DNA of 54,105 nt from Euprymna scolopes (GCA_053919585.1 CM132807.1); one strand, 5' to 3'. Counted from the stretch's first letter, positions 1,099 to 38,360 are shown. Made by a program: numbers and translations. The notes: generated from the sequence alone by a model not told the origin.

Positions 1099-1137
1099 AT
1101 TTTGTTGTTGTTTTTGTAAATGTTGTTGTTGACGATC
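1099..1137 (-). CDS. Micro-exon x (39 nt, phase 1-1), GSSTTTFTKTTTK
   Basis: ttaCAG acceptor, GTAAGT donor. Confidence 0.8.
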
Positions 1138-4100
1138 CTGTAAATGAAGACAATTACATCAATATTATTTGAAAAAATGTTCAAAATGTCATGATTTATT
1201 AGTCATTCTAAGCTTCATGAGACAGCTTTATTTTTTCTTTTGCTGTTTCTATAAAATAATTGTGTAATTAACTAATTCGATATTTTGAATATCAAAAGGC
1301 AGTTTTTATATAACCTGCATCAATGAAAAGTTTGCTGTGTGCTGAGTGTTTTGTAGCTGTTTCCAATAATATAGTTATTATATGCTGGGTAAGCATAGTC
1401 TCGTTACTGGCTTCCTTTTACCTTCTTCTTAGAGAAAAAATTATACATAGGCTCATTGCTACTCTTATAGCAGACATATTAAATAGCCAGTTTCACTACG
1501 TCTCCCTGAAACATAAAGGGTTTATGTTCCTAGTAGGTTTTGTACGTCTTCCGATGGTTTCAGTTTAAGGATTACCTTCCTACGCTTCTCCCTCTCCTGT
1601 ATTTCTTTCTCTTAGAGATCTACATTTATCTTGCTCAGAATCATCTTTATGCATTATTTCATCTTCATCCAAATTTTCTAACTCATTCTAATCGTTTTGT
1701 CATGCATTATTTTAACTTCTGACATTCCATTCTATAAAAATCCTTTCTAATAATTCAGTACGAGGAAGAATCGTACAGATTTTACTATTTTGATCTCCAT
1801 ATTCACCATGGTCCCCGGTTTTCATTATTAAATATAGTTGTATTGTGAACTTTTTGCATGATAAATTCTGTTGTTTCTGTATTTGATTCATTTTCTTTAT
1901 ATACTACTAGCATTTCAGCCCGGTGTTGCCCGGGTGTTTGGAGGTGTATGCTGAGCAAAAAAAAAAAAAAAAAGAGTAAATTTTTTTTTAATTTGACCCC
2001 TATTATGACCCCTTAAAATTTATAGTTTCGGGCTCAAATCACTTTATTAAATTAGATCCAGGTTCAAGGAACCTATATCTAAAATTTCAAGTGTCTAGAC
2101 CCAAAATTGTCGGAGGAGTTTGGTAGAGTTCTTAAAGGTCAAATCGTTGAAATGTGACCCCTTAACAGCCAAATTTCTGACTGACACCCGTCACATCGAT
2201 TTTCCCAAATCTCAGTACCCGGTATTTCAAATTTTGAGTATATAGACTAAAAATTGACAGAGTTATTNNNNNNNNNNNNNNNNNNNNNNNNNNNNNNNNN
2301 NNNNNNNNNNNNNNNNNNNNNNNNNNNNNNNNNNNNNNNNNNNNNNNNNNNNNNNNNNNNNNNNNNNNNNNNNNNNNNNNNNNNNNNNNNNNNNNNNNNN
2401 TAAATTCTTAACCTAACTCTAGTTTTCCTTCCAATTAAAACTGATGAAATTTCTAGTTTTTCAGCATGAGATATTGTGTAGTAGCTTAAAGGCAAAAAAA
2501 AATCTTTATTTTTTCGACTCCTGTGGAAATCATTGTCTAGGTATAGTATTTGTGTATTTATTTTTGTGATTATTTAAATTCCTATTAATTATGATCGCCA
2601 ATTTATTTTTCAGATTACTCTTTAGTGTATTTTTTTAAACTTGTTTTTTTTTGTAAACTCTCTCGGCAATTTCCGGAACTAATTTTATCCAGCTTTTGTA
2701 GAGACGAGTTTTTTTTTCTTTCTTTACTTAAACTTATTTCATTATTGAATAGATCATTTTATCATCACAAATTATATCTTAAAAAAAAAACAAAAACATG
2801 CTCATTTTTTCTTAATCAATGCTAGTTATCACCCCTATATAATTATCAACATCTTTTTATGTGCCGGTTTTTAGTATGCTGCTTCTGGAAAATATAAACT
2901 TCAGAATTTGTTTTATCATAGAACTTCTTTTTTCTAATATATGGATTACTTGAGGACAGCCTGAAATATAGTCTCCTCATATTAATAAAAGTCTCAATGC
3001 AGTAATATTCACATGATCCATATGCACACAATTCATGGCTCCACTTCTCTGGACAATGAATGTAAAATAAGTTGTGTAAAATTTCTTAATTCTTTACATG
3101 TTTTGCATCTTTTTATATATTCTTCAACATCTCATGAATATCTTAATCATCATACTTTTTATTTTATCCTTTTTTTAGCTGCTGCTCTACACTGTTTATC
3201 ATCATGTACACTTTTATCACTAGTTTTCTTATATTTAACAAGCTTTACAAGCTCACTTTTTCTTCATAAAACAGTTTAAATTAACTGATCCCACGGTCCA
3301 AATGTTTTATAATATACATATGTGCATATATATATGCATGTGTATATACGTGTGTGTGTGTGCGCTCGCTCGCGCGTGTGCACATGTCAATGCAATGCAA
3401 TAAAAGAAATAAAAAGTAATTGAGAAACCGGTTCAGTTAAACCAGTAATACTAATCTTACCTGGTTCAGCCGTTGATGATGGAAAAGTCCATTCAATAGT
3501 TTCCTCTGTTACAGGTAATACTTCTGTAAAAGCAGTAGTTGTCTGGGTTGTGTGTTTGCTACTAGCAGTTGATGAAGTTGGTGTTGATATTGGTATTGAG
3601 ACATGTGTACTTGCTTCACTTGGTATCACTTCTTCAGTTGTTATATACTCAGATGTTGTAGAACTTGCCTCTGAAATTTCGAAATAAATGTTTCTTTTTA
3701 ATTATAGTTTGTAAGCAGATACTATTTAGCTAAAATACTATGTCTATATTTGTAAACTGAAATCTGCAGATTTATTTGTAGAACATCCTCATTTGCCTAT
3801 TTTATGAACATATTTTAAGTAGAAGGCGATTTGTGAAAAATCCAGAAATGTATATTTTCTTAAGATATTCAACTTGATTTGACAAAAAATCAGGATATTT
3901 CCTTAGCATATTCTCGCCAGAAATTGATTTAAGGAAAATCTGAATCCAGATAACTTCCAAATATTCTAAGTAGAGGTTGACTTGAAGAACATCCAAATGT
4001 GGTATTTTCGTATCATATAGCTGGAGATCAATTGGGAAAAAATGTACATGGATATTTCCAGAACATCTTCTAACCAAATGATGATTTCAGAAAAATCAGA

Positions 4101-5119
4101 ATATATTATAGTTAAAGATTAATTTAAGAAAAGTTCGAATGTGAATATTTTTTAAACATATTCTTGCCAAATGTTTATTTCACTTTTTTCTAGATAATTG
4201 TGTTCTGTTTTAATATCTTTTCAAATAGTCATATATTTATATGCCATACTGTATAAGCTACTTAATTTAGATAGTGATATCCTATTTTTATAAATTTGCA
4301 AAGGTGGCACATATATTTATTAACTGTATGATCAGTTATATTTAGATAATACTGTTGTCTTCCTACCCATTAAAATTCCTCATCCTGTATAAAAAATGTA
4401 TAATTAAATTCGTTTTAAACGACCATTAAATTACTTCTCTTTTTACAATCTTTTCTTTTGTATATCTAAAATATAAGAAAACTACAAAAAACAAAAACAG
4501 ACAAATATATACTCCTAAATACTACAGTAGATATAAAGGAATAAAAAAGGTGAAATACTTGTGGTGACTTTATTTCAAAATCTTGTAAACATTTTAAAGA
4601 AAATCCTTGTATTTTGACTTACCTGTTGAACTAATCCTTGTAGAAAAGGTTCCTACAATGAAGATGTTTTTATTTTAATATCATGGATAAAACAACTGAA
4701 AGTTATTGTATTACTGAACAATTTTAAAATTAGATTTTCGAAAGTTTTAGGTACATATTAATAATTTGTATTATTTTGACTATCTCTTCTCATCTTGAAT
4801 GTCATTATCACATGTTTTGGCCAATGTAATCCCGAACTTTCTTCATGTGCTTCATCTTGAATTTGGAAATCAATACAAGATTTTTTTTATTTAATCTATG
4901 AGGGTAGATTGTTCTTATTTGTCAGTCATAAGCAGGTAGAAGTGTTAATTTACTTTATTCATAGCATGATGCTATTGGACAAGTATGTTGTTGGTGTTTG
5001 TGTATTTGTTGCTTCATTTTACAGATCCAAAGGAAAGAGGAAGACACAAGAACTTTTACTGCTACATATTCACTATTGCTATAATGATGGCTTAATAAGA
5101 ACAGAAAAGAAGAGAAAAG

Positions 5120-5191
<72 letters not shown>

Positions 5192-8100
5192 TATTCACAG
5201 AGCCAACAACTTATATGCCAGTATTATTACAGATTCTAATGCTACAAACAGCTTATTAGTTGTAGTGGACAGAGCATATCCCCTCCCCCAATGTAACTGA
5301 CATAGTATTGCCCGTATTGTGTATAAAAACTACACTGACTGTGTTAAAAGTAGGCTTTTATTAATATCGGCTCACTTCAAATCAGGCCTTGAAAACCTAT
5401 GATTGAAAAATGACTATGATTGAAAAAAGAAATGAAAGCAACAACAGTTGAAAGAGCTTTTATTCGTGATACTTCAGTTACAACCTGCTTATTGGTGCTG
5501 TGTATGCGGAAGTAAAAAGCCATTTGTAATCTTAAATTACAATATTGCCATAATGTTGTAATAATGCTGAGAATAAATGGTTAGTTGGAACTAGGAGAAT
5601 AGTTTATTGTAATGTTACAACAATCTTGCAATGATGTCAAATTATTATAATGTTACAGTAGTATTGCAACAATGTCCAATTATTGTAATATTACAATAAT
5701 GTTAGAATACTGTCGAATTATTGTAACATTATAGTAAGATTGCAAAAATGTTGAATGATTGTAATGTTACAATAACACTGCAATAATACTGAATATCCCA
5801 CAATCAAAATAAAATGAAGTTGATTATTGGTATGATTTTTGTCCAATTCCTAGATTACTTTAATAATAAACAAAATGCACTTACCTGGAGTTTCAAAACA
5901 TGCTTTGATGCTGACCCACACTTTATATCTCTCATTATTTGGCTTAATAGATTCAAGAATAATCTTGACCACTTGGACATTTGCGTAATCTTTGCTGCGA
6001 TAAGTTCCCGAAATATTATCCGCTTTTCTTTGAAATGAAGGCAAACTGCTGTCCCATGTTTCAACAGAAAATCTCCCAACATTTCCAAACACTGTAACTT
6101 CTACAAGAGGTAAACCTTGTGCTTTGTTTGTGATTGAGATCAATAGGTACGGTTTTGTTTGATTTTGGTTTATTGGAACAGGTACAACCCAACCTTGTCC
6201 ACTTGGACGTGAATCGCTTGGTGAGCCATCACCGAATTCAGGTGACCCATTGATAAAACGGTCAGGGATCAGGAATGGATTTGACATGCCTTCACTAACA
6301 TCACAAGGTACTGAAAAATAAAAACAAATATAGATAAGATAATAAACAAATATAGATGCATATTTATTCTTCCTTTCATATGCCACTGTACTTTAATATA
6401 TTTCAACCGTTAACTACCCTGGCCAGATAATGAAACTATGAATAGGTTCCTATCACTTCACATCTAGTTTGACTAAAAGTTTAACTCAGGAAAATAAAAT
6501 AAAAATAAATAAAGGATGAATAATAGCAATAAAAACATAGACATTTGTTTTTTCTTCTACATACTACCATGCTTTAATCTATTTTAAATATATTAGCTAT
6601 TTCATTCTTTCAAAATAATTTGAAAAAATAGTAAATAAAAAAATGAACAAATCAACGAATAAATAAAATATATTAATAAAATTAAAAAATAAAACACAAA
6701 ATATGTAAAAAAAAAACAAACCCCAAAAAACACTTGCATGTTATCTATCATTGGAAAAATGGTATTTTGACAGCCAAAGTTGCACCTCTAGGAGAAAGGG
6801 GGCCAAGGGAGACTTCAGACCCTATCATATTATAAGACATTATTGCTGCTCTCATGAGATCACAAGTTCCGAAAGTTTCACCAGCTTAGTTTCTCTGCTT
6901 ACTTGCTGGTCGCTGATGTAAACATTTTTACTGAGTTTTGTCCCAAGTTCTACAGACCTTCTCCAACACAAACGTGGGTCTACTGTAAGTTATTTCTTGT
7001 ATGCTTATCATGATTACTTTATCTTGTTATTACAACTGTTACAGGCTTACTACTAAAAAGAATATCCAATAAAAGCCAATTGTTAACATCCTTTGATGTA
7101 CATGAATGTCAGACAGTGAATAATTTTGGTCAGAATGTTCTCCCTTGTGTCATTTGGTCATGATTTGACTATTTATCTATGACATAGTTTTCCCATAATG
7201 TTAGCATGTTGAATTTAAAATAACTCTACCAACCCATCTGCTCTCTTAATGAACCTATTTGTTCTTTCTCTTCTTTATCTCTTCTTTCTGCTTTTGTTCT
7301 CACTTTTCTTCCTTTCTGTCAATTGTTTATTATACTCAGTCGTCCTATGGTAAGGATCTTCTGGACTCTTTCAAGCCATCTATCTGATGCTTTGTGTATG
7401 ATTTATATTCAATTTTGAAATGGTTGTATTTTTTGTCTACTAATGCTTCCCCTTCTGCTCCATCATTGACTTGATCTGGCAAGTTCATCTGGATTCACTA
7501 TGACCTTGATAAACTAGTTCCCATGTACTATGCTTTTTATCTAGTAGTATTGTTGATGGCTGATATGGCAGCACCTAGTATTCTAAAATTCTCATCCATC
7601 TGATATGGACGAAGCTCAACATCACTTAACTTTGATGGTCGAATAAAAACAGATATGTAAACAAAGTTGCGCTGTGTATTATTGCTTATCCATATGCAAT
7701 TTTTTTAATAATTTGTAAATAAAAATGGATTCGCATAATGCCTTTTGACAACATATTAAGTAAGCACTTGAGTTTAATTTGATTTGATTGTATTTGGGCA
7801 GTTATTCACTTTTTCACTCATTTCTCAAACTTTTAGATACAATTACTTTCTTCATATTTCTTAGCCTACTTTTGTTCACTTCAAATTATTTATTGGGTGC
7901 TATAGTTATTGTTTGCTGTTTTGCAAGTGTTTTCCAGAAACCATTTGAATTATTGAAGTTCTTCTTTCTGTTGCTTACAATTATAGCTGTAACTGCCTGC
8001 CATTAGCCAGAATAAATTGAAGTAATTTAAATTTTGAAAATTTCATACCTTGAGATGTTGTAGTTCCTGGTGTAGAAACTGATGGTAGTACTGTTGAAGT

Positions 8101-11100
8101 AGATGTACTTTTACTTGGGAAGACTGAAATATAAAAATACATTGATATAAACATCTTAAGAAATAAATTGTTGTTGTATCATCATTGACATCAATCTTTA
8201 ACCATTTCCCTAGTTAATTGTTGTAAAGGAATGAATTTGTATGAATTAAATAAATTAACAATGTAATTCATACAAATAAATCATATGCCTTTTATTTACA
8301 AAATATCAGAAGGTATAAACGATTTAAATGTTTATTCAATTGTGGATTTGTTGATAAAGGAATAGACTACTGATAATATTGTGTTCTTCTTTATATAGTG
8401 TGGCAATCAGCAGTTATTGCCAAATATCTTTAACAATTTCTTTTATTGCTTTTAATGAAGATATTTTAAGCTTTCCTTATAGATATTTCCTTCTGCTTAT
8501 TTGATTTGAACTTGGAACCAATTTTGGACTAAAACATGCAATTTCTTTTGTACTAATACTCATAATCTCTCTTTCTTTCTCCCACCTTATATAAGACAGG
8601 AGGGATAAAGGTGAGAAGAGAAAAAGAGAAGGAAAAACAGGAGTTGAAAGCAGAACAGAGAGAATGAACTTTGTAAACATTGAAAAAACGAAAAACTGTA
8701 GCAATCCCACTAATATGAAAATATATAATTGATATTAAGTAGATTAGAGTCATGTCCTCTTGAACACTCAGATTTTCGGATTACAAACTGCCAGAGTTTG
8801 CTGTCTCTTATTCCACTCTTCTGGATTAAGAAAATATGCATTTTGATGTGAAATTAAATTGACATCTTACCAACATATTTGAAAATGGATCTATTCTTGT
8901 AATCTTTCGTCTTACTTTTTGGTGAAAATTGAACTTTTGTAGACATTGTTGTAGTTTGTTTTTACTTATGAGAATTTTTGGCATTTCTTATTTTTGGAGA
9001 TCAATTTTAGGTGTGCATATGTTTGAGGGAGAAGGGTAACTAATCTATTATCTCCTGAAAATGCATTAAATCATTTTATAAATGAAATAATTATTTGATT
9101 ATGTTTTTCTTACAAAGTCCTATGAATGAATAGATACCACACTTTATCAGAATTAGTGTTCATTGAGTGTGAAATCTCTATTTATTTGTGGGCTCATACA
9201 TAAGATCGCCTCCACTTCCTCCAATTTTCTGTACTAGGCTATACAGACTATACTTTTTTTTTCAATAAGATCAACCCCATATCAACAGGCGGCACAGGCT
9301 TTATCTCCTTTAAAAGTATTTGATTATGTGTTCTTAAAAATGCTACTTGGTACGATAGTGGGAGATTATTTTACATTGAATTAATATATGAAAGTGATCT
9401 ATTATTTTAAAGTCTAAAATAGTGTTTCGTTTTTTTTTTTTTTTTTTTTTTACTAACTTTTTCAATGTGTTTGTACGTAATCGCCTAAAGATAGAATCTT
9501 ATGTTTTTATTTTGGGTGAATTAGCACAGAATGCAAGACTTCAATTTTACCAAAGTATATAGCTAGCAGCTATAATGAATCAGTATGACACTGATCTATC
9601 TGAGCTAAATTTCAACAACAGAAAAAATTTCCTCTTTTTCTTACTTTGTTTTCTTTCTTTTTCTCTTCTCTTCGTCTTTCTTTTCTTTTTTTTTTTACTT
9701 ATTTTTTCTTAACCGTTGTTCCAGCTTTGTTTTTTTTCTTTTCAAAGTTGTGGTAATTAAAAAATTAAACATTCACATTACTAACCTGAAGTTGTTGGTG
9801 TTGTCTTGGAAACTTCAGGAGTTGTATATTCTATAAAAGATAAATAAAAATATGTAAAAAAGACAAAGTAAATTTACAAAATATATTTGATAAATTATAA
9901 GATCTTTTTGTCATTTACCAGCCCCCGCCCCCATGAGAGCTAGATATCTTGTAAACTTGAGCTTAATGCAGGATGTGGCTATTTCTAAATGCTACAAGAA
10001 TGTTGATAGTCGGTAACAATCTCCATTTATATAAAGTTAAATAATGTGTATATGTCTATATATTCGTATGCATAGGATTAATTCCGAAACTAATTAACTA
10101 ATCATTATGAATTCTGGAACATAACTGATAAGTATAAGAGTGGACAGTGTGGATTATATTTAGTTTTATGTAAAAAGGCAAAGAGGGACTAGAAGCCCCT
10201 GATGAACGCTTCAGATACTTCCGATTTTTATGAAATTTTACCAGTAGATATTAGATTTATTTTTTTTTGTATTTTAAATGGTCATAGCGGGCATAATATG
10301 AGCATGACCTCCTATCTAGAAAATTGAAACATTTTTGATTTCCATTAAATTTAATCCATAATCATTAAATACCAGTCAAGCTAGATTCTGTAAATTTCAA
10401 TTTCAAGACTCCTTAAACCAAGCCTTAGATTTTAAGCATTTTCTAAAACCAAAATCATATAAAAGATTTTGATCAAATTTTGAATAAAGATTATAGACAT
10501 TAGGTTTAATAGCATTACATGTTGATTTTAATGCTCGTAAATGATTCAAATTGTTCTATTTGCAGAATTAATTTTACCTGTCTTGGGATGAGTAATTACT
10601 TAAAAATTACCTGATAAGAGCCTGGTGAAAAATTTTATACAATCAATCGATTATGGTATCACCACTCTTTCTCTTTTTTCTTTGAAATTTTGTAGTGATT
10701 AGATTATGAGCTTTTTTGTCACATATATCTACCTTTGCAATTTTATTTCCTTTGGATTTATTATTACTACTATTACTTCTACTAGAATAGGGGTTTTTAC
10801 ACTAATCATTATAAGCGATTTCTCACTGACAAGAACAAGTGGTGCTTTCTGGAGTCTGAGTGACTAATCTCTCCAAATTTTTAGAACTCTTTCAATAAAG
10901 ACTGTAAATAATTTTGCTACTGCAACAGACGTTTACAATTGATTTATTGTTGATGATGACCATTAATCTTCTCTGATATTTGAGTGGCAATAAGCCTACC
11001 CAAGACTCAGTATTCTCTGTATTTACAGTGCTCTCCCTATTTGATCTTTAGAGTATTTGACCCTCCACAACCATTTTGTATGGTTCCTGTTGAGACTGAT

Positions 11101-13047
11101 GTTACAACCTGTGTGTCAGTGTTTTTTTTTTTTTTTCATTTTCAATTTAAAAAAATTAGGAGGGCAGTGTAAATGTAATTTTTCATTGATTTCTCTGAGT
11201 TTCAGTTTCCTTTGGCTCATGTGATGGTCTTTCTATATTTTATTATAATTAGTCGGAAGTGACAGTGGTAAAGTTGATATCAGAATCAACTCTAGACTCA
11301 GTATTCTATGTTTGAATCCTGTTGGATCCATTAACTACTGTCATTTGAAATTTTGATAATTTTCTCATGGTCTCTCCTGTGAGTTATGAAAAAAAAAACC
11401 CCAAAAAAACGAATCAGAGAAATTAACAAATTGAAAAATGCTAATTTTTATGAAAATGATATCTGACCTTGCTACCTCAACTGTTCTACATCTACTAACC
11501 CCCAAATTCTTCTAATGAGACCAAACCAACAGTTTCGTTTTTGCACACATTTCCCTATGATGATTGAATCTTCACTGAGGCCATCCAATCTAAGCCTGTT
11601 ATTAAGATGCATTGTGTCACTCTCATATCATTTCTCTCCATACAACACATGTATTCAAGCTTTGATGATCAAGTTTCACTTCCATATATTATCCCACTTC
11701 ATACACATGTCTGATAGACTCTCATATTGATCAATAATTGTAATGTTTTGCTGGTTAGTAATTACCGGAGTTCCCTGAACTTACTCCTTGTTAAACATTC
11801 AGTCTCCTGGCTAAATATACAGCATTAAGTTTTAGGATAAATAGAATAATCTAGAGAAAGGATTGCCCCTCCCCCTTCTTACATCTTGGTGTAGTAGCGA
11901 AGTAAAAAAGGAGTACTTGACTAAAGTTGATCTATTAATTTTTTTTATAAGGTGGAAGCAAATAATTATAATAATAAATATATATAATTTAACACTAGTT
12001 GCTCTTTTACTCATACAATGAAAATGCAATAGAAATATTTGTAATGGATAGAAAATAAAAATTAATATTCTTACCTGGTGTGAAGCAACCAATAATTGAG
12101 ACCTTGACGTTAAAGTCTTTAGGGTATATGCCAACATCGACAGGTTTTACAGATTTTAGAATGATACGGACTTTTGTAACCTTTGTCATAACCGATGGTT
12201 TGTAAGATGATATCCCATTTGTAAAAGTTCCAACAGATTCATATAGAATCGTTTTTGGATGTTGCAATTGAACAACGTAGTTATTTACGTTTCCGTGAAG
12301 AATCACTTCTGCCAATAGAATTCCATCAGGATCATTGGTGAGTGTGATCGTGATGGTGGGGTCATAACCAGATTTACTTGGCACTGGAACTTTCCATCCA
12401 CTTCGATCTGGACGCATGTCAAGTCTTGTAGAAGAGCTTTCAATTGGTGTGACAATTATGTGGTGATCAGGAATAAAAACTTCATTTTTCATTCCTTCAT
12501 TCAAAGTACATGGAGCTGAAAATAAAGATATCTTTGTGAAACATATGTATCCTATTGACAGAGAAAGCTTCAAAATAAAATGGTAAAACTAATGCGATGA
12601 GGAAACAAGAACATATATTTGTATCCAAACATATTGGAAATCAAATGAAGATAAGAAATTTCAATGTGTATATTAGTATTTGTACAATTCTGAAATATGG
12701 GCAGTAAACAAGAGACTTACTAACAAAATAAACAGCTTGCAAAGGAGACTAGGAAAATATGAAATAAATTTCATCGTCAGCTAAGTATGGGAAGTGTAGT
12801 AAAACCATAAATAGAAGACGTTGGCACATGCCATGAGACTGAGTGGATTTCTGCTAGTATGAAATACCCTAAATCTGATATGAAGAGAAGTCAACCAAAT
12901 GCAAAGTGGATTAAAACTAGCATAAATAATTTGAACTGTGATGATTTTGCAAAACACCCTAAAATCTGCACACTAAAAAGCATTACAAAAGACAACAAAT
13001 TCTGGAGAAACACAATGATGATACTAATAAAATAGTGAATTTCAAAA

Positions 13048-13084
<37 letters not shown>

Positions 13085-14224
13085 GCAGCAAGCATGTCTG
13101 ATTGAACACGACTGAGTCCTTTTTTTCGATTTTATTGAATAACTTTTCGATTCATCAAGTGGTCTTTTTTGTTTTAGCTGGTAGGTTGTATATTATGGCG
13201 CGCAGTAGTTGTTCGGTCATATTCTCCTCGAGCGCTTTCTATTGGTACATCCGATCGTCACCAGAAGTGGTTGTTGTTATTGTCGTTCTTTTCTTCATTG
13301 AGGCTTGGTGTATTAATAGTTAGTTCTATTTTATTTTTATTTTATATTGTTATACAGGTAGGTGCAGGTGGGTAAGGGTGAGTTATAATTTTTCATTTTG
13401 ATCTTCTTATTTTATTTTTATTCTATATTTTATTTATTTAGTTATTTATTTATTGTTAATTGTTGAGTACGGTTAGTATATTTGTCCGGATATTAAACGC
13501 GATTCGATTAATGAGGGGCTGTAGTTTTTAATTAGAATAGCTTCTTGTAATTTAAGTCTTTGTGTGCAATTGTGAAACTATCTAATTTTAGTATTGTTAG
13601 TTAAAATATTTCTTATTTCGGATGATTGTAGTTTTTTGTTGTGATAGGTTAGGTGTCGCTTGATGACACTATTATCTACTAAATGGTAGGTTAATCGTCA
13701 AGAGAGTGTTGTCTTGATGTGGCCTATGTATGCATTGTATGAGTTTTAGAGTGGGTTTGAAGACATTCTTTGAAGGGGCAAATAAATTCATACACTACAT
13801 TAGTTTGTGTTAGTGTGATGTTAGTATTATTATTGTTTTTAATTATTAGATTAGAGGTTTTAAATTTAGTATATTATTAGTTTGATCTTTTTGTTCTGGT
13901 CGGTGGGTCTGGTATACCTTTTAATTAGGTTTGTTATTATTTTTTCGTCTGTTTTGTAGTTAATGTGCAGTTGGTTTTTGTAATATACTTTGATGGTGTC
14001 GTTTTTCAACAATTAACATAGCTAGACAAGTTAGAATAAAAGAATACTAAGAAATTAGCAATGAAACTATAATGCATCTATTGCACTATATATAAATAAA
14101 ATGTATTTTACCTGTTGTTGATGATGGCATATAAGTAGTTGTAGAACCTGATAAAAATAAAATTGGGTGTTAATTTATTGTATAATTTAAACAGTTCATA
14201 TTTGAGACATACCAAAACAACTTA

Positions 14225-14293
<69 letters not shown>

Positions 14294-17200
14294 AATAACA
14301 GTATAGTTATATTTCAAACTCCAAATATTTATTTTTCATACAAAACAGTTCCTTCAGCATGTTAAAATTTTGGTACATATTTTACAGATCCATTTCGTTA
14401 TGAAGAACCCTTTTCTTCTTGCAACATAATAGTGTTATGCATTTTTTCTATCTAAGCAAAGAATTTCTAATTTTCTGAAGATTATATGCACGAAAAGAGA
14501 CGGTATTGACATAATAATAACTGTTTGTTTCTGCATAACAAAACGGATATGTAAAAAAATGTACTGAAATCTTAACATGCCGGAGGAGCTGTTTTAGCAT
14601 GAAAAAAATATTTGGATTCTGGAATGTAACTATACTATTATCCTTTTATATATGCCTTTTATATATGCTCTATTGTTATATTTAACATGCATCGAGCTTC
14701 TAAACAAAAAGGATTGGTATACCCATAGAATTAAATATAATTGAAAAAACATATTTTACAAAAAAAAACAATATATATATATATATATGGTAATAAGTAG
14801 TAAAACTGCACACCTAGGAAATACAGATTTTTTTTCTTTTTTTTTTACACAGTGGATACAACTTATCAAAGCCCGGAAGCCACTCAGGGATAAAGGTTAT
14901 TGCAAGTACATTACGTTAGTGTGGAGATTTGATGAAGTGTTTACTTAAGGGGGAGGTTCATTAGGAATTTGTTAACGTTGGACTTGAACACATCCAAGTT
15001 GTAGTCAAGTGGGAAGCAGGCAGACGGAACAGAGTTCCACAGGCGTGCAGTTCTAAGAAAGAAACTTTGTTCATGGAATCAATGTTTTGATTTAGGCACA
15101 GATAAAGAGTGGGGGCAATTTTTCACAGTGGATTCGGCTAGACGGGTGTTTTTGGTGAAAGATTAGCGAAGGGGAACCAGAGATTGGACTTCAGACGAGC
15201 ACCTGCCATGGAAATAACGATAAAACAAGGAAAGGCTCGCAACGTCTCTTCTGTGGGAGAGAGGTTGCAAGGTAGAGAAAAGGGCATCCCCACTAAGCCA
15301 CAAAGTCTATTTTGTACTCTGTCAAGGCAGGATAGGCTGTTTTTAGCAGCTCCTGCCCAGATATGGCAGCAGTATTCCATCCTTGGACGTACTTGGCTTT
15401 TATATAGATAGAGAATTGCATCAGTAGTGAGATATCTTCTGGAGCGGTAGAAGGATCCCACCATCTTTCCAGCGACCTTGGCAATAAACTTGAAGTACGT
15501 GTTCCATTTCAGATCAGGAGTAAAGGTCAAACCCAGAAGCTTGTCAAAACATGGGGCCTCTCCCAGACGAGAGCCATCCATCCCAATTGATGCCAGATGG
15601 GGATCAGAGCGTTGATGATGTAAGGCTAGGAGTTTGGTTTTAGATGCATTAAAGGTAACCAGTCATGTGTTCCCCCACTGAACCACGCGCTCGAGATCAG
15701 AGGAGAGAGAATCAGAGAGAACTTTGCCATTTACAGCCTTTGATGTGTTGCCGTAGATGGTCGTGTCATCAGCATAGATGTCAACGAATGATTTAAGTAT
15801 GTGTTTAGGGAGATCATTGATGTAGAAGCAGTTTTAAATATTGAAAAATTGAACTATTAGAAGTTTGGATAAAATGCTTTAAAGCACATGCTGGAACAAC
15901 GAAGTTATGAGATTGCCAGAAATCACCAACCTATTTTTGATAACTGTGTGATATGAAGCTATAAGAAAGATTTCACTAATCACTTATCTGACTGAAATTG
16001 AAAACGTAGCATTTACGAATTCAAAGAAGTAATTAAAAAAAGATTTAACTACAAATATGCAGTTTCATGTCATACTCAGAAGAGATTCTATTTGACTCAT
16101 TTATGAGATCCTACAATATCACTCTGCAATGTAGTGGAAGCTAGAGGATGATTATTTTCTAATGTTCTCAAATTCGTCTCTCACCATCTCAGTTTATTCA
16201 TTACATGTCGCTGGCAACTTCCTTTTTACAACTCAATATCTTGAAAAGCATGATTATGCGTGTACACCCATACACGCGCGTGTACACAAAAGACCCTCTC
16301 TTATTGCTTTTACCTTATGTGTTTAATAAACATATTATTTGTATATATTGTAACTCGGTTTTAACGTTCTCCTATTTGATGTCTCTCCTTTAAATGTACT
16401 TCTCGTAATGTTGGCTAATGTTCCCTTTTATTCGGAGTCGTACAAACACGTGTATCTGGCATATTAGAATATCTCTCTCCTCAACATGTTTACGGATCTT
16501 GCACAAATTGACTAACAGCCTACGTTACAAATCTTCTTTATACGATTTCTTTACATAACTGGAGTCTGGTAACTGGGAAACTTGTTCAAACTATGCTTTC
16601 TAATAATGATATTGGTACATCTGTTAAGCTTCTTTCTGATACCTGTACTTCTTTATTCCCCTGACAAAGTTATCCAATGATAGTTCTTAAACATTTGTAA
16701 TCATGCAATAGAAATAAGAACCCTAGTCTAGACGATCTGCATTCAAAAATACTCCAAGCACTCTCTCTACTCATTGTAGACCCTCTCATCCACGAGTATT
16801 TGTCCCATCATTCAAGAAAGGCGACACAAAATTACAGACCAGTTTCACTCACTTCTGTAATTTGAAAAGTATTTGGGACTCATGATATCTCATCTCCTGA
16901 CCATAGCACTAATTTCTTAAGTTCAACACTACTTCCCGAATTTCTTCATTATGGAGGAGTGGGTCACTAAAATTTTGGATGATAGCTATGCAGCAGACAT
17001 TGTCTTGCCTGACTTTACCAAAGCCTTTGATTCAGTGAATCATAGGCCTCTGCTCTACAAACTCCAGGCCTATAGATTTCAACCACATGTAGTAAGATGG
17101 ATAAGCATAAAACATCAATCAACATTTGAATGTACCTATCGGGGGAGGGTCATACTGGAGCCAGATAACGATTTCCACTGAACTTGTATCACTAGTGGAG

Positions 17201-20200
17201 GAGCAACATTCTCTGTCTGTGTTTAAGACGTAGTAATGATTTCTGTTGTAGCCATGATTGACGTTTTGGAGAAAATATTCAGACACAGCTTAGATGTATA
17301 TATCTTCCAACTTTTCATTTACATGGCTTGTTGCATTTTGCTGTTTTGCTAAAAAATTTGATTAGATTTAATTTTGAAAACATTGGGTTTCTTTTCATGC
17401 TCCGCCAATTTAATCCATTCTATCATATACAGCAATAAGAACTATCAATGCATTGTAAAGTCTTAATTTCAGAGGTATTGATTTTAAGAAGGTGATATGC
17501 TTTACGATATATTGGTTTTGTGGGGTTGGGTGGGACTGGTTTGAACTTTTAGTGCATACTAGAGAGATATTTGTTCAAACCTTAGGATTAAAGGTGATTC
17601 TTTGGTTTCTGTATATATAAACTTTACGTGCGTTTCGAATCTCAGCTTAAAACATGTCTAGCCACACAAAGGAACAAAGAAAGCTGGCTGCGGATGCATT
17701 TATGCACATGTTTGTTTTAGCTGAGTACTTATCATTTTAAGACTAACAAAATTATACCAAACTAGCTGAATCTTGTGGGAATTCCACATTGTTTTCTACA
17801 TCAATTGGTATAATTTACTGTTTATAATATTCTTTTTGAGATAAATGTCTGTCATGGTTAATACTATTAAGAAAAAAGACTCTCTTCCGTAAAAATAATC
17901 ATCAATATCAGCTAAATATTTTTAAAATAAATAAAACAAATATGCCTCTTCTTTATTTATTTAAAATTGTAGAAATTTAATTATTTTTACAACAAAGAAT
18001 ATTCTCTTTATTCTCATAAAAATAATTGTCAGCTAAATATTCTTCAAATCAATAAAATAAATGTCACTTTTTGAAATGTATTTATTTAAAATTGTACTGT
18101 TTTAGTTCATCAGATGACATAAGTTGATTATAAAATGCACCAAGTCTGAATTGTTTACCTTAGCGACATCATTATTAATCAGGAATCACCATCTTGGTTA
18201 ATCACAGAATCTTATTTGTTTTGATGCATGTGAAAGGTGATAATGTACATACATGAAATGCCTTAGAGTATTATTATATTGACAACACAAAAAGATATTT
18301 TTAAAGGTATGAAAAGCTCTCACCTTCACATCCCACTGGTTCTATAACACAGGCACCATTCCTATATGTAAACTCCTCTTTGCAGGTGCATATTTTATTG
18401 CATTCTGGAGAAACTGAACAATCGCTGTTACATCTTTTCAATACACAGTAACACTTTTCAGCACAATCTGAAACACAAGTAAAAACAGAAAAAAATATCA
18501 TCTCTTGAAAAAATATATCAAAACCAGTTATAGTTATTCATAGAATTGTTCACATAATCTCACTTGTCTATATTTGTATTTTTTGGCTGTACCTATTTGA
18601 GAATCTTCCATTTAAGCTACTATCTTCTCAAATCAATCCTTTTAAACAAATTTACAAAACATTTACATTATTAATACAATATCAATATACAAATTACATT
18701 TTATGAGAATTGGCAAAAGCTCTTAGAAGCATTATTAATAAAATTAAAAAGTGTGAATAAGCAGACCAGCGGTTTTAAAACCACATTAAGATTTTATAAA
18801 ACAAGCCTTAATTTTTATATTTTTTAACTTAGTTTTGGATAGTAAAATATCTATCATCAGAGAAGAAGGTTTTTATTTACGAAAAAGAAAGAAACAAAAG
18901 AAAATTCTTTCCTTTACTATCCGAAATTAATAAAAAATATTTGAAGTTAAAAAAAATTAAATATTTTATTTTTATAAAATATTTGCATCTTAACATAGTT
19001 TAAAAATATCTTGTCTGTTTATTCAAAATGTTTAATTTCATTAAGGATGCTTTTAAGAGCTTTTGACAATTCTCATATAACATTAAAGCACCCACACATA
19101 TAAAAAACTCAAATGAAAATTTATTTTCAACAATACTACATGTTACAACACCAGTACACATCTTTCATACAACGATACAAAGGGCACGAACATTTTATTT
19201 ATGAAAAAAAAGAAGAAAAACGACTCTTTCTTTCTAGTCATTGATGGATATGTTACTATTCGAAAGTAATAAGTTAAAAAAAGAACAATTGAATGATTCT
19301 TTTAATAAAATATTTGCATCTTAACATGGTTTTACAAAAGTCTGCCTTTTTATTCAAAATTTAAAAATTAAATTTTGTTAAATATTTCATCCAATAGTTT
19401 CCCCAAATCCCCTCTTAATTCTTTCATTTCTGAATTCATCCATCCAATTCTATCTGAAAATGTACTATACATTTGCTAATAGTAATCTGATTCGGCGACT
19501 TGTTCTAATGATTTATCACTCTGTTAGTCAAACAAATTAAATCTACATAATAAAGTAAAATCAATTTTTCATATTTACATTTAAAGATTATATCTCTGTA
19601 AATATAAGTGATATATAGAATTCAACTATGCACACTCTTTTTGCTGATTCTTGATGTGCTTTCTGAAAATATGCTCCCATTTTGTTTGCTTTCAGTAATT
19701 TCTATAATTTTTTCGACTCACCTGATTCTTCTAAAACAGTCAGAAATATAGGAAGTCTAATTAAGTTTTACTTCCACACAAAAAAAAATATTATTGCCAC
19801 CACCACAACCACCATCTTAAACTGAAAAATAATCTTCATACTTTTTCTTGATATTACTTTCATTATTTAATTTTTCTGACTCAATATTGATGCTTTCCTG
19901 CTATATTTTTATTAGATGAATACAAGTTGCCTTCTTTTGCTTTTGTGGTGATTTGATTCGCGATTTCAAAAAAATTTATGCGTTCAAGAATTGACCAAAT
20001 AAAAATAGAATGACTTGATTGTTCATTACCTACCGCATCCATTATTCCATACTGTTTGCATACAGTTAATACTCTCTTTCCTATTTTTCTCCTCATACAA
20101 TTTCTGTAAATACATAACCTTTCTTTCCCAGATGATGCCAAGTACCTTTAATTACTTATGTTTGTGTTTTCATACCTCCCTTTGCATTTATTTACATACT

Positions 20201-23200
20201 TTCCCAGTCATATATATTTTCCTATTCTAGAATACAAGACTACAATTAATGAATAGAAACATACAAATGGATAGTTTGAATAAGGCAGCTACATATTTTC
20301 TTTCCTTGTCCTACGGTTTCCATTTACCATTCTTTTTCTTATCTTTCACAACGAATGCCACTTATGTCCTTTAGTAATATTTCTGTAGCACCTCAGCCTA
20401 TCTTTCCTGCCTCTCCAAGGGTACATTCGGTCACTTACGTTTGTCATCTTAGTGCTCACTTGAGATATTAGTCAAAATCAATTTCTTGCTTTAACTATCC
20501 ATTTGTAATTTATTTGCATTATACCTCAGATGACTGATACAACATTTTTAATAAACGGTTGCTTTTATTATTTGGTTCCTACGAAAGATAATCTCTCTTT
20601 TAAACCGATTGCTAACCCTAAGTTCTCATGATAAAAATAAAAACCCAAGAACAAACTGAGAAAGCATGTACAAGAGTAATTTCCACCAGAACTTACAGTT
20701 AGTAGTAGGGTGAAGAGTTTTTCTTTTGTTTGACAAACGCTAATATTAACGCATAATTACGGACATTTTAACAATAAATATAAAAAATCTCAAAAAATAA
20801 AACAACAAATTATTTGCTGATACGCATTAATGCAATTTTATCTACAAATCCCATAAAATAAATTAGTGTTATGGGAATATTTCTTTAAGAAAATATGTTT
20901 CAGATCGTAGCCAAAAAATATTTTTGCTTGAACTATTCATTTGTGATCTATTTACATTATACCTCAGGACGAAAATGGAAATAATTTTTTTAAAGGGGAT
21001 ACACTTGGGATATTAGTTAAAAACAATGTTTTATTTTACTTTCTATTTGGGATCTATTTAGATTAAAACAATTATTTAATAAAAGTTATGAGCCGTTTAA
21101 GTTTGTATAAATATCGATTCTGAGCAAAGTAGCCCACTTTGTTTGCATTACTAGCTAAACAAACACTGTTACTTTGTCTATAATCGATAGTTACACAAAC
21201 TTAAAGGACCTGTAACTTCTATTACGTATTCAGTTTTGTATATACTAATGTTTATTTGTACCAAATATGGATTGCAAACAATTTTGAACTTTACTAATGA
21301 TTCCAAGAATGGCATATTTTGGAGTTCAGCCTGAATTAAGATTTATTAAAAAGATTGTTTTGCTCTATGCAAATAGCAAATGTTGGAGTAATTATACTAA
21401 AAATTGAATCACTCGTGTGTTAACAACGTGTAAAATACTGCAGAATGTTAATAAAGTTTGAGTTGTATGAACTGATGGTAAAATCGAAATGTTTAACTCA
21501 CCAGAAGGAGTAGTACTAGTCTCTGTAGTTGTGGCTGAAAATTAGAGCATAGAATTTTCAGTATTTTAATATTAGTCAATGTTAGTTAATCAACGATTAT
21601 TTTGTTAAGCTGTTTTTCTATATACTTTAATAACACAAAATATATGCTAAAATATTCATTCGTTCTAGAATTGAGTTATCCTATTCCCAAGCTGAAATTA
21701 ATTAAAGACAAACTAGTTGATCAGATTTAGTATAAAAATCAACGAATTCGAAAGAAACTGAAATTTATTTTATTTTTTCAGAAATATTTGACCTGACTCA
21801 TGGATGAAGCAGATTTTTATATGTAGATCTGTCAAAAGGAAAAATCGTATTCTACTTTATATATGAGAAAGATAATATAGGCATGAGAGATGCAAAGGTA
21901 CAGGTACAAACTCATAAATTGAACTTTAAATAAAGTGCTGATAAGACAGAAATCTTTAACTCACCAGAAGTAGTACTAGGCACTGTAGTTGTGGCTGAAA
22001 ATTAGAACAAATAATTTTCAATGTTTTAATATTCGTCAATGTTAGTTAACATTTTGTTTGTCTCACTAAAGCTGTTTTCCTATAAACACAAACATATAAA
22101 CACAAAATATATGCTAAAATACTGACTTGTTCTAGAATTAAGATATGTTAAAAAAACAAATCTATTTTCATTGTTCCGATTGGCCATATTTTGTAATTAA
22201 CTGAACATGTCACCTATCTCTCTTAACTATCAATATATCTCTATCGCTAATTCTCACTCAATATTAACTCAACCATTTCCTAATATTTCTAATTTTTTTC
22301 ACACTCCTTTATTTCCACTTTTTTTTATACACCTCAGCTTCTTTAATCCACTATCATGTCACCTATATCTTGGAGACCTTTTTGTTCACCCACAAATCTG
22401 CTCTGTTACATTTAAAAGTGTATCCATCAACTTCTTTCACTGTTTTTCTGAAATAGATCTGGTAAATGAGTATGCATACATTTGGTCTTTAAACTTGCAT
22501 TTTATGTGTCTTCTTTCACTGCTTCCTCCAAAGATGAACTTATTAATGGGCTTTTGAACTTAATTTTTATCAAGTTTGTGTAAAATAAAATATGGAGATA
22601 CAACTTTTTATTCTGTTTTAGATTTTTTTAGATGAAGTCTGATAATCCGTATCATTTATCTCGGATATTATTCTCATAATGTTTTGGTCAATGCAACATT
22701 CAACCTTCGTTAGATACATTTAACCAAATTCGGGAATATCTATGTCAAACTTTAGAATCTGTTTGAAATTTCGAACTAAACTCGTTATTTAATCTGCAAA
22801 GTAGATGATGTTCTGTTCTGTCAGTTACGACCGATAGAAGACTTCTGTAAATTTTAATGATAATTTCTTAGTATTGCCTGTACTGAGGATTGAACTTTTA
22901 ACCTCCAAAAGACTGTTACATAAAACTAATTATTACACAGCACTTTTTCTGTTACGTGAATGTTCAAAATTCTGTACAGATTCCCAAGTTCAACATAAAT
23001 ATTCCTAAGTTGAACAAGATGCACAAGAAGAATATCAAAGCTTACATTGGCCGAAACGTTGTGAGAATAACATCTAAGATGAGAACAGTAGTCCCAATAA
23101 TATAACTTTTTGTATTGTCTTTTTATTATCTAAAAAAAAAAAATGAATGTAAGAGTTAATAAAAACTGAGACAATAAGTAACCTTAGATATTATGAAAAC

Positions 23201-28868: not shown

Positions 28869-28903
<35 letters not shown>

Positions 28904-33643: not shown

Positions 33644-33697
<54 letters not shown>

Positions 33698-37539: not shown

Positions 37540-37586
<47 letters not shown>

Positions 37587-37906: not shown

Positions 37907-37952
<46 letters not shown>

Positions 37953-38297: not shown

Positions 38298-38360
<63 letters not shown>

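What the first reader, a model, noticed from the sequence alone, without database searches (positions are those of the whole stretch)
1099..21994. Eleven consecutive symmetric phase-1 exons: a potentially combinatorial mucin/lectin cassette
Seen: every exon from 21994 to 1099 (30, 33, 144, 36, 441, 45, 75, 426, 30, 210, 39 nt) is a multiple of 3 with phase-1 ends, as are exons a, b and j. Ser/Thr linkers are split into micro-exons scattered across kilobases of intron. Known: vertebrate gel-forming mucins usually encode the PTS region in one large exon, while schistosome micro-exon genes diversify secreted proteins by skipping symmetric micro-exons. Inference: any subset can be skipped in frame, which could tune O-glycan spacer length and discoidin-domain number. 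Phase-1 symmetry is also normal for shuffled extracellular modules, so skipping has to be shown.
Basis: partly seen in the sequence, partly recalled or inferred. Interest (0 to 1): 0.7.

Follow-up and report, generated by a model that had tools for sequence, protein, structure and literature searches.

The report
Head of giant squid mucin gene
The eleven small in-frame exons are real and form the start of a roughly 640-kb mucus-protein gene, in which over a hundred clotting-factor-like beads alternate with tiny sugar-carrying linker exons; the RNA I could test includes the linker exons and shows no skipping.

Summary
Observation confirmed. All eleven minus-strand exons (21994 to 1099) sit at the stated sizes. 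Each has AG/GT borders and phase-1 ends on both sides.

RNA contigs from two runs carry three splice joints exactly at the predicted borders: 441|45, 45|75 and 75|426. The 45- and 75-nt micro-exons are therefore real and included. No skip joint was seen.

The assembly gap (2268-2400) lies inside a predicted intron and touches no exon. I did not fill it.

The two ~145-aa modules match no Pfam family. They fold with high confidence as discoidin (F5/8C) domains (pLDDT 95.7, Z about 14.5).

The larger picture:
- The window holds the first two of at least 118 intact single-exon copies of this bead.
- All copies are on one strand across 500 kb, and each is followed by conserved Ser/Thr micro-exons.
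- VWD, TIL, VWC and LDLa exons lie upstream, and a cystine-knot exon lies downstream.
- This is the layout of a gel-forming mucin.

Whole exon-intron blocks are duplicated at 99% identity, so phase symmetry is best read as what lets the array grow. Combinatorial skipping remains unshown.

The scan had already found the tail of this same gene on other DNA (s1-280705, s1-280726). The nearest known designs are DMBT1, MUC16 and hemolectin-type mucins.

The parts
21965..21994 (-). 30-nt phase 1-1 Ser/Thr micro-exon (TTTVPSTTS)
   Evidence: AG/GTGAGT borders. Tandem duplicate of the next exon, 77% identity over 224 nt including intron, differing by an in-frame 3-nt indel.
21502..21534 (-). 33-nt phase 1-1 Ser/Thr micro-exon (TTTETSTTPS)
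18324..18467 (-). 144-nt phase 1-1 exon encoding a 47-aa module with 10 Cys, weakly TIL/EGF-like
   Evidence: Pfam TIL only at E=0.2, below the cut-off.
14112..14147 (-). 36-nt phase 1-1 Ser/Thr micro-exon (STTTYMPSSTT)
   Evidence: donor GTAAAA.
12075..12515 (-). 441-nt phase 1-1 exon: discoidin-fold bead 1 (146 aa, Cys at positions 2 and 143)
   Evidence: Donor border confirmed by RNA joint 9830->12075 in X1 and X2. AF2 pLDDT 95.7. Discoidin fold, Z 14-14.7. A 65%-identical protein of unknown source (P0002) looks like its counterpart in another species.
9786..9830 (-). 45-nt phase 1-1 Ser/Thr micro-exon (YTTPEVSKTTPTTS)
   Evidence: Both borders confirmed by RNA joints 9830->12075 and 8123->9786.
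8049..8123 (-). 75-nt phase 1-1 Ser/Thr micro-exon (FPSKSTSTSTVLPSVSTPGTTTSQ)
   Evidence: Both borders confirmed by RNA joints 8123->9786 and 6310->8049.
5885..6310 (-). 426-nt phase 1-1 exon: discoidin-fold bead 2 (141 aa)
   Evidence: Acceptor border confirmed by RNA joint 6310->8049 in X1 and X2. 36% identical to bead 1. 61% identical to P0003, a protein of unknown source. Runs X1-X4 hold 86-100% of its sampled words.
4623..4652 (-). 30-nt phase 1-1 micro-exon (TFSTRISST)
   Evidence: and read by eye. It has the weakest pyrimidine tract of the set.
3461..3670 (-). 210-nt phase 1-1 Ser/Thr/Glu-rich linker exon (69 aa)
   Evidence: It is the only AG/GT-flanked open phase-1 segment of 210 nt in the region.
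2268..2400 (.). Assembly gap (133 N, length only estimated) inside the predicted intron 3460-1138
   Evidence: No exon abuts it. I left it unfilled. A hidden micro-exon cannot be excluded.
1099..1137 (-). 39-nt phase 1-1 Ser/Thr micro-exon (SSTTTFTKTTTK), member of the 42-nt 'SPxTTxTKxTTTx' micro-exon family
   Evidence: In 13 paralogous units the exon columns are 86% identical, against 44-48% in the downstream intron. Acceptor, donor and an ~80-nt upstream block are conserved.
52513..53573 (-).
   Evidence: Not examined further.
26115..49522 (-). Upstream Cys-rich exons of the same gene (TIL-like at 49217-49522, VWC at 34972-35241, others unassigned)
   Evidence: Pfam VWC at E 1.1e-7. TIL at E 9.5e-4, below the cut-off. 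ORF list.

Best explanation
The eleven exons are genuine cassette exons at the start of the central region of one giant gene. They are probably constitutive. The gene encodes a secreted, polymer-forming mucin of a squid-like mollusc.

Read on the minus strand of contig C25, the gene has this order:
- three VWD regions at about 32.29-32.32 Mb;
- TIL, VWC and LDLa modules, plus one split discoidin-like domain;
- at least 118 repeats of one discoidin-fold bead in a single 426-441-nt exon, each followed by one to three Ser/Thr micro-exons of 27-90 nt, spread over 500 kb;
- a cystine-knot exon at 31.683 Mb.

The protein would be beads on a string. Each discoidin-fold bead would be closed by its first and last cysteine. 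The beads would be separated by short, stiff, O-glycosylated linkers. The chains would be joined end to end through the VWD and cystine-knot ends.

Every cassette is phase 1-1. This lets whole exon-intron blocks be duplicated or lost by unequal recombination without breaking the frame, which is how the array grew. In-frame skipping is possible, but it is not what the available RNA shows.

Shown here: the exon borders, the splicing of four exons, the fold, the array, the purifying selection and the block duplication.

Inferred: a single transcription unit, glycosylation, polymerisation, the disulfide, and any lectin-like binding by the beads.
For: Exon borders and phases.

The Ser/Thr micro-exons are specific to one strand and one phase (5 against 0, shuffles 0.045).

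Spliced RNA joints at the exact predicted borders, and one 1310-nt contig carrying 441-45-75-426.

The array:
- At least 118 intact copies lie on one strand at C25:31689674-32190513.
- In the 334 kb I hold, all 55 copies have YAG/GTAAG borders and phase 1-1, 53 are exactly 435 nt, and none has a stop.
- Every interval between beads holds conserved Ser/Thr micro-exons of four families.
- dN/dS among copies is 0.18-0.46.
- Whole 4.93-kb exon-intron units are 98.8-99.5% identical.
- Micro-exons and their splice signals are conserved above the surrounding intron.

The fold: pLDDT 95.7 and pTM 0.90. Foldseek and VIA-align best matches are neuropilin b1, factor V/VIII C domains, DDR1/2 and Dictyostelium discoidin I/II, with Z 13.5-14.7 and rmsd about 3 A over about 128 of 146 residues. 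The Atlas's nearest clusters carry F5_F8_type_C.

Flanking modules: VWC, TIL and LDLa, VWD, Cys_knot at 29.7 bits, above the cut-off.

Relatives: a chiton 'mucin-2-like' protein with 7 beads separated by PTS linkers, and a flatworm VWD/C8/TIL protein with 4 beads.

Literature: F5_F8 domains are characteristic of lophotrochozoan mucin-like proteins (PMC4948705).
Against: - Only four of the eleven exons have junction-level RNA support.
- The runs are labelled RNA only by guess, and they also cover the introns. That coverage could be pre-mRNA or contaminating DNA.
- No read or contig links the VWD head, the array and the cystine-knot tail, so a single transcription unit is inferred from order and strand alone.
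- The near-identical distal units may be miscounted by the assembly.
- Two polyA runs show no expression, so the expressing tissue is unknown.
- Pfam and PDB sequence profiles do not recognise the bead. Homology to discoidin rests on fold, the terminal Cys pair and domain context.
Confidence: 0.75

Rival explanations
1. This is the reader's model: the symmetric cassettes are used combinatorially. Regulated skipping of micro-exons and bead exons would tune linker length and bead number between tissues or states, as in titin's PEVK/Ig region or schistosome micro-exon genes.
For: - All exons are in-frame removable.
- Several micro-exons have non-consensus donors: GTAAAA, GTATGA and GTTAGT.
- Family-A micro-exons carry an extended conserved upstream intronic block. 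Identity at -20 to -60 is 0.73, against 0.47 for bead exons of the same units. This is the kind of element that assists or regulates micro-exon recognition.
- Alternative splicing was proposed for chicken Muc13's multi-exon PTS domain (PMC1552070) and for DMBT1 (PMC3100851).
Against: - No skip joint (441|75, 45|426, 441|426) appears in the contigs of two runs that do carry the inclusion joints at depth 16-22.
- The conserved intronic block is equally expected for constitutive micro-exon definition.
- Block duplication alone explains the symmetry.
Confidence: 0.2
2. The exon model is partly wrong. One or more of the seven untested small exons could be a chance AG..GT open segment, most likely the 30-nt exon at 4652-4623 or the 36-nt exon at 14147-14112. 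Alternatively, further micro-exons could have been missed, for example inside the gap.
For: - Dozens of chance AG/GT open segments of 30-39 nt exist in the region.
- The 4652 exon has a weak pyrimidine tract and failed my stricter filter.
- The gap at 2268-2400 hides an unknown amount of sequence.
Against: - The chosen exons are the only Ser/Thr-rich candidates, and such candidates occur only on this strand and in this phase.
- The two micro-exons that were tested were exactly right.
- Paralogue conservation supports the 39-nt exon and the 30/33-nt pair.
- The X2 contig extends 245 nt past the 426-nt exon and 394 nt past position 12199. These lengths fit 30+210(+5) and 316+36+42, but do not prove it.
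Confidence: 0.25
3. The 500-kb array is not one gene. It could be several tandem genes, a partly dead array, or an assembly inflation of a shorter repeat.
For: - No transcript spans the array.
- Distal units are 99% identical, the kind of repeat that assemblers miscount.
- Only 150 of 243 candidates were scored.
Against: - All 55 examined copies are intact with canonical splice sites and dN/dS well below 1.
- In the 334 kb held and examined, the only module exons between the bead exons are Ser/Thr micro-exons. Only 252 kb of that lies inside the array.
- The VWD search lists no VWD hit inside the array.
- The cystine-knot exon sits 6 kb past the last copy, on the same strand.
- The proximal 14 units are 79-87% identical and so cannot be assembly copies.
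Confidence: 0.15

Closest known systems
DMBT1 / gp340 / salivary agglutinin (SRCR-SID array)
   Same: Globular Cys-bounded domains, each on a single exon, alternate with short (20-24 aa) Ser/Thr-rich O-glycosylated spacers. This gives a stretched beads-on-a-string mucosal protein. Unit number varies by genomic gain and loss, and alternative splicing has been discussed (PMC3100851). That the SIDs lie on their own phase-1 exons is from my memory of Mollenhauer's gene-structure papers; I did not check it here.
   Different: DMBT1's bead is SRCR, not discoidin. It has 8-13 units against at least 118 here. It ends in CUB and ZP domains and has no VWD head or cystine-knot tail. The squid linkers are often split over two or three micro-exons.
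Protostome gel-forming-mucin-like proteins with F5_F8_type_C domains (hemolectin/hemocytin type)
   Same: Three VWD-C8-TIL units are followed by F5/8C domains and small PTS tracts. Lang et al. state that the F5_F8 domain is characteristic of lophotrochozoan mucin-like proteins (PMC4948705).
   Different: Those proteins carry a few Pfam-recognisable F5/8C domains and two more VWD units. Here the beads escape the Pfam model and number over a hundred. No C-terminal VWD was listed near the array. The PTS material is in micro-exons.
Chicken Muc13 (PTS domain in multiple exons)
   Same: Its mucin domain is split so that each exon encodes one repeat unit. The authors proposed that splicing could set PTS length (PMC1552070).
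   Different: Muc13 is a small transmembrane SEA mucin, with no folded bead between its PTS exons.
MUC16 (tandem SEA-domain repeats)
   Same: A giant mucin whose central region is tens of tandem units made of a folded domain plus an O-glycosylated linker, each unit built from several exons.
   Different: MUC16 has SEA domains, is membrane-tethered and lacks VWD and CTCK polymerisation ends.
Schistosome micro-exon genes (MEGs)
   Same: Symmetric exons of 3-81 bp separated by long introns in genes for secreted proteins (bioRxiv 10.1101/2023.06.21.545858).
   Different: MEG coding sequence is almost entirely micro-exons, and variation by skipping is documented. Here most of the coding sequence is in 435-nt domain exons, and skipping was looked for and not seen.
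Chiton 'mucin-2-like' XP_064614628.1 (Liolophura sinensis) and Macrostomum VWFD proteins
   Same: These are true sequence relatives of the bead. The chiton protein scores E 1e-93 with 7 copies, and the flatworm protein has 4 copies next to VWD/C8/TIL. The beads are separated by PTS linkers.
   Different: They have far fewer copies. Their gene structure is not known to me, and they are uncharacterised.

Membership tests
Gel-forming mucin (VWD-C8-TIL head, PTS centre, CTCK tail) | N-terminal VWD domains | tested here: met
   VWD exons over the Pfam cut-off lie at C25:32287182-32288704, 32307135-32313886 and 32320544-32320735. They are on the same strand, 55-90 kb upstream of the window. Linkage to the same transcript is not shown.
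Gel-forming mucin (VWD-C8-TIL head, PTS centre, CTCK tail) | C8 and TIL modules | tested here: inconclusive
   TIL matches score only E 9.5e-4 and 3.4e-3, below the curated cut-off. C8 was not searched.
Gel-forming mucin (VWD-C8-TIL head, PTS centre, CTCK tail) | Pro/Thr/Ser-rich central region | tested here: met
   Ser/Thr micro-exons with 60-90% S/T/P lie between all 55 examined beads and in the window. It is not one large PTS exon as in vertebrates.
Gel-forming mucin (VWD-C8-TIL head, PTS centre, CTCK tail) | C-terminal cystine knot | tested here: met
   PF00007 scores 29.7 bits (cut-off 24) at C25:31683310-31683543 on the minus strand, 6 kb beyond the last bead. One in-match TAA suggests an intron. 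I did not fetch the sequence.
Gel-forming mucin (VWD-C8-TIL head, PTS centre, CTCK tail) | Dense O-glycosylation and disulfide polymerisation | not testable with these tools
   This needs biochemistry.
Discoidin / F5_F8_type_C domain (PF00754) | Match to the family's sequence model | tested here: not met
   No Pfam hit at E<=1 for either bead. A 26-sequence profile finds no PDB sequence at E<=10.
Discoidin / F5_F8_type_C domain (PF00754) | Distorted beta-barrel discoidin fold | tested here: met
   pLDDT 95.7. Foldseek probability 1.0 and TM 0.6-0.73 to neuropilin b1, DDR2, FV/FVIII C2 and CASPR2. Z 13.5-14.7 over about 128 of 146 residues, including Dictyostelium discoidin I/II.
Discoidin / F5_F8_type_C domain (PF00754) | Cysteines at the first and last strand that bridge the termini | tested here: met
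   C143 is invariant, and C2 is present in all full-length rows of the 26-sequence alignment. The disulfide itself is inferred.
Discoidin / F5_F8_type_C domain (PF00754) | Ligand binding by the loop 'spikes' (sugar, lipid or collagen) | not tested
   I made no loop comparison or docking. This needs binding assays.
Micro-exon gene (schistosome MEG type) | Symmetric exons of 81 nt or less with long introns | tested here: met
   Seven of the eleven exons are 30-75 nt, phase 1-1, with introns of 0.4-4.2 kb.
Micro-exon gene (schistosome MEG type) | Most of the coding sequence made of micro-exons | tested here: not met
   1221 of the 1509 nt are in the four exons of 144-441 nt. In the array the 435-nt bead exons dominate.
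Micro-exon gene (schistosome MEG type) | Protein variants produced by exon skipping | tested here: inconclusive
   No skip joints appear in the contigs of two runs. Contigs cannot prove absence.
Domain-plus-linker cassette arrays (DMBT1/MUC16 design) | One folded domain per exon, linkers on separate exons, all cassettes in one phase, growth by block duplication | tested here: met
   Splicing of linker exons to bead exons is shown.

The most novel reading that the evidence does not exclude
The locus is a titin-like splicing system for mucus. It would have more than 300 phase-1 cassettes, made of discoidin beads and O-glycan micro-exons. The micro-exons would carry their own conserved upstream intronic elements, from which tissues select different subsets. 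Bead number and spacer length of a polymeric lectin-mucin would then be set by splicing and not by allele length.
Probability: 0.15. Interest if true: 0.75.

Novelty: new variant of a known kind. Interest (0 to 1): 0.45.

Why it matters
Vertebrate gel-forming mucins keep their glycosylated region in one huge exon. Here the same job is done by hundreds of small symmetric exons alternating with folded beads, in a gene of about 640 kb that could encode roughly 20,000 residues.

The bead belongs to a discoidin-fold family that standard models miss. It occurs in mollusc, flatworm and annelid proteins; in at least the chiton and flatworm hits these are mucin-like. Annotation pipelines will therefore fragment or mislabel these genes.

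The locus gives a clean natural example of how phase-1 cassettes let an extracellular protein grow by block duplication. It also provides a concrete place to test the old proposal that mucin length can be set by splicing.

For cephalopod biology, it is a candidate major structural or agglutinating component of a mucus or jelly secretion.

Tried and rejected
- Pfam on the two beads and the linker exons gave nothing.
- The word-index protein search with the 426-nt exon found nothing. It could not be used to recover spliced neighbours.
- The PDB sequence-profile search found nothing.
- The two polyA raw-read runs (X23, X24) had no reads on the exons. They covered only an intronic repeat at 11400-11800, so they gave no junction counts.
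- I considered SCO-spondin, because upstream exons include LDLa, TIL, VWC and a discoidin-like domain. I saw no thrombospondin repeat in the 334 kb held, and the centre is PTS plus beads. I file the gene as mucin-type, but I did not search TSP1 genome-wide.
I could not check whether a distant mollusc's 107-kb contig has the same exon design.
All searches were exon by exon, by reference.

Full report
**Checking the observation**

The window is AT-rich (about 30% GC) animal DNA. It corresponds to G000:C25:32178001-32232105 of a 5.9-Gb assembly.

This returns exactly one Ser/Thr-rich or domain-bearing candidate for each size:
- 21994-21965 (30 nt)
- 21534-21502 (33 nt)
- 18467-18324 (144 nt)
- 14147-14112 (36 nt)
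- 12515-12075 (441 nt)
- 9830-9786 (45 nt)
- 8123-8049 (75 nt)
- 6310-5885 (426 nt)
- 4652-4623 (30 nt)
- 3670-3461 (210 nt)
- 1137-1099 (39 nt)

I read the lower part by eye as well. All eleven have a pyrimidine tract, YAG and a GT donor. All begin with two bases that complete a codon and end with one base that starts one.

Many chance AG..GT open segments of 30-39 nt exist in the region, so I ran a control. Under fixed criteria, Ser/Thr/Pro-rich symmetric candidates occur five times on the minus strand in phase 1-1. They occur zero times in each of the other five strand/phase combinations. Shuffled sequence gives 0.045 per shuffle, with a maximum of 2 in 200.

**The assembly gap**

The only run of N is 2268-2400. 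It lies inside the predicted 2323-nt intron between the 210-nt exon (ending at 3461) and the 39-nt exon (starting at 1137), and no predicted exon touches it.

Both neighbouring exons are phase 1, so the reading frame of the model does not depend on the gap's length. Whether the two sides are contiguous, and whether a micro-exon lies in the unread letters, cannot be known.

**RNA evidence**

Four small runs of one study (X1-X4) hold 86-100% of the sampled words of the 426-nt exon.

I had one read-laying run of at most 6,000 letters. I placed it on window:6200-12199, so that both bead exons anchor the two micro-exons between them. The contigs of X1 and X2 show three joints:
- 9830->12075, skipping 2244 nt
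- 8123->9786, skipping 1662 nt
- 6310->8049, skipping 1738 nt

All three have CT..AC ends, which is GT..AG on the minus strand. These are exactly the three predicted introns. One 1310-nt X2 contig (depth 16.3) carries all three.

The 45- and 75-nt micro-exons are therefore real and are spliced between the two bead exons. None of the possible skip joints (441|75, 45|426, 441|426) was listed.

Caveats:
- The runs are RNA only by guess, although canonical joints show that spliced RNA is present.
- The runs also cover the introns, which could be pre-mRNA or DNA.
- Contigs drop rare variants.
- Two polyA raw-read runs (X23, X24) had no reads on the exons, so I have no quantitative junction counts.
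- The X2 contig's overhangs are 245 nt below the 426-nt exon and 394 nt above position 12199. They fit 30+210+5 and 316+36+42, but they do not prove those exons.

**What the large exons encode**

The two ~145-aa products are 36% identical and match no Pfam family at E<=1.

A profile of the two, searched against 1.84 billion representatives, found only 56 proteins at E<=0.001. Those identified include:
- a chiton 'mucin-2-like' protein with seven copies separated by PTS linkers;
- Macrostomum VWD/C8/TIL proteins with four copies;
- an annelid protein;
- two proteins where the domain sits beside a Pfam-recognised F5_F8_type_C domain.

With a 26-sequence alignment, AlphaFold2 gives pLDDT 95.7 and pTM 0.90 for an all-beta domain.

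Foldseek's best matches are neuropilin b1, DDR2, factor V/VIII C2 and CASPR2 discoidin domains (probability 1.0, TM 0.6-0.73). VIA-align gives Z 13.5-14.7 and rmsd about 3 A over about 128 of 146 residues. Its list includes the Gal/GalNAc-binding discoidins I and II of Dictyostelium. The Atlas's nearest feature clusters also carry F5_F8_type_C. A sequence profile finds nothing in the PDB.

Each of the two window beads also has its own closer match in the big protein library. These are 65% (P0002) and 61% (P0003) identical. Their source organisms are not recorded, but they look like one counterpart per bead in another species, which would make the two head beads old and individually conserved.

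**The larger picture**

Searching the window's own genome with the bead profile gives at least 118 intact copies. All lie on the minus strand at C25:31689674-32190513. The window holds only the first two.

In that stretch:
- All 55 array copies have YAG acceptors, GTAAG donors and phase 1-1 borders. 53 are exactly 435 nt, and none has a stop.
- Every interval between beads contains predicted phase-1 Ser/Thr micro-exons. They belong to four recurring families:
  - 42 nt, SPITTSTKKTTTA
  - 72 nt, PGPTTGSTSTGTPTITSTPLIST
  - 57-63 nt, SQTTKTTTTTTKTTTTTP
  - 48-90 nt, TPKITTTSGRTSTTS...

Across 13 older units, that family's exon columns are 86% identical, against 44-48% in the downstream intron. 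The acceptor, the donor and an ~80-nt upstream block are conserved. Bead exons of the same units lack such an upstream block: identity at -20 to -60 is 0.47 against 0.73.

dN/dS among bead copies is 0.18-0.46. The proximal 14 units are 79-87% identical. Distal units are 95-99.8% identical with a two-bead periodicity. Whole 4.93-kb exon-intron units are 98.8-99.5% identical.

The 30- and 33-nt exons at 21994 and 21534 are themselves a ~460-bp tandem duplicate that differs by an in-frame 3-nt indel.

**The gene as a whole**

Upstream minus-strand exons, in the window and just beyond it, encode VWC, TIL-like and LDLa modules and one split discoidin-like domain. VWD exons lie further upstream on the same strand, at 32.287-32.321 Mb. 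A cystine-knot match above Pfam's cut-off lies 6 kb past the last bead, at 31683310-31683543.

This order (VWD head, PTS-bearing centre, CTCK tail) is the definition of a gel-forming mucin. The locus would span about 640 kb. At about 145 aa per bead plus about 20-40 aa of linker, the array alone would encode on the order of 20,000 residues. That figure is an inference. No transcript links the parts, so one gene is the most economical reading but is not shown.

**How it most likely works**

The product would be a secreted polymer. VWD assemblies and the cystine knot would join the chains. The centre would be a string of discoidin-fold beads, each closed by Cys2-Cys143, held apart by short O-glycosylated spacers. 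Discoidin domains commonly bind sugars, lipids or collagen, so the array could act as a highly multivalent lectin or cross-linker in mucus. All of this is inferred.

What the phase-1 symmetry demonstrably does is allow exon-intron blocks to be copied without breaking the frame, and the array bears the marks of repeated block duplication. Splicing choice is possible, but it is unsupported by the RNA I could see.

**Comparison with what is known**

- Lang et al. state that F5_F8 domains characterise lophotrochozoan mucin-like proteins. They also state that hemolectin has three VWD units followed by F5_F8 domains (PMC4948705).
- The same group showed that chicken Muc13's PTS domain is split into one exon per repeat, and proposed length control by splicing (PMC1552070).
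- DMBT1 alternates single-exon SRCR domains with 20-24-aa Ser/Thr spacers and varies in unit number (PMC3100851).
- Schistosome MEGs have symmetric exons of 3-81 bp with long introns (bioRxiv 10.1101/2023.06.21.545858). There micro-exons make up nearly the whole coding sequence, which is not the case here.

The locus is thus a new variant of a known design. Its scale is extreme, its bead family is unmodelled, and its linkers are dispersed into micro-exons.

**Earlier notes of this scan**

After I had found the array and the fold myself, a word look-up showed that other agents had already described the tail of this same gene, 434 kb before my window. They described it as the end of a giant squid mucin with more than a hundred discoidin beads ending in CTCK (s1-280705, s1-280726). 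They had also described similar genes elsewhere in the genome, with the DMBT1/MUC16 comparison (s1-259193).

These notes agree with my results. They are not independent evidence. The DMBT1 comparison came to me from that note, and I then checked it in the literature.

**Limits**

- Seven of the eleven exons lack direct RNA support.
- The expressing tissue is unknown, because the run labels are coded.
- Copy number in the near-identical distal units may be misassembled.

Noticed in passing
window 1138-1240 and 12 paralogous sites in C25:32111296-32171050: An ~80-nt intronic block upstream of the 42-nt 'SPxTTxTKxTTTx' micro-exons contains CTAATAAATAAT and CAATTTCTCCAATAAT motifs. Its identity across old repeat units is 0.72-0.73. 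The same region upstream of bead exons scores 0.47. It may be a micro-exon definition or regulation element.
   Followed up: partly
window 11400-11800: An intronic repeat is covered at depth 500-690 in runs X1 and X2. It is the only part of the stretch with reads in the two polyA runs. Many loose ends and small internal joints suggest an abundant, transcribed dispersed element.
   Followed up: no
window 553-803: A ~250-nt element has at least 40 copies at 75-80% identity on many chromosomes. It is probably a SINE-like repeat.
   Followed up: no
window 15138-15581(-), 16951-17181(+), 25028-25420(-), 40092-40725(+), 42739-42978(-): Fragments of non-LTR retrotransposon ORFs (motif YLYKSQVRPRMEYCCHIWAGA) sit in the introns of the mucin gene, in both orientations.
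   Followed up: no
L009:3739-3852 and L009:5340-5639 (C25:32255844-32257744, minus): One further discoidin-like domain lies upstream of the window, among the TIL/VWC/LDLa exons. It is split over two exons, unlike the single-exon beads of the array.
   Followed up: partly
G000:C8:104118987-104864792, C46:86052731, C12:145781109, C23:120729761: Weaker, partial matches to the bead profile form other tandem arrays, mainly on C8. These have VWD and Cys_knot matches nearby at C8:104256112, 104922528 and 104351072. They are probably paralogous giant mucin genes.
   Followed up: no
window 21439-22194: A ~460-bp tandem duplication produced the 30- and 33-nt micro-exons. The copies are 77% identical over 224 nt, and the exon copies differ by a 3-nt in-frame indel.
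   Followed up: yes
window 5123-5188 and 5604-5787: An (AG)33 microsatellite and a 38-nt-period tandem repeat lie in the intron after bead 2.
   Followed up: no
window 37586-37824: Another first-stage note reports twin hammerhead ribozymes in an intron of this gene (s1-268946). I did not examine it.
   Followed up: no
P0006, P0008, P0011: A second, more distant family of the same bead has His/Pro/Glu-rich linkers instead of Ser/Thr linkers and a VWC head, in proteins of unknown source. The bead is therefore used with non-mucin spacers too.
   Followed up: no
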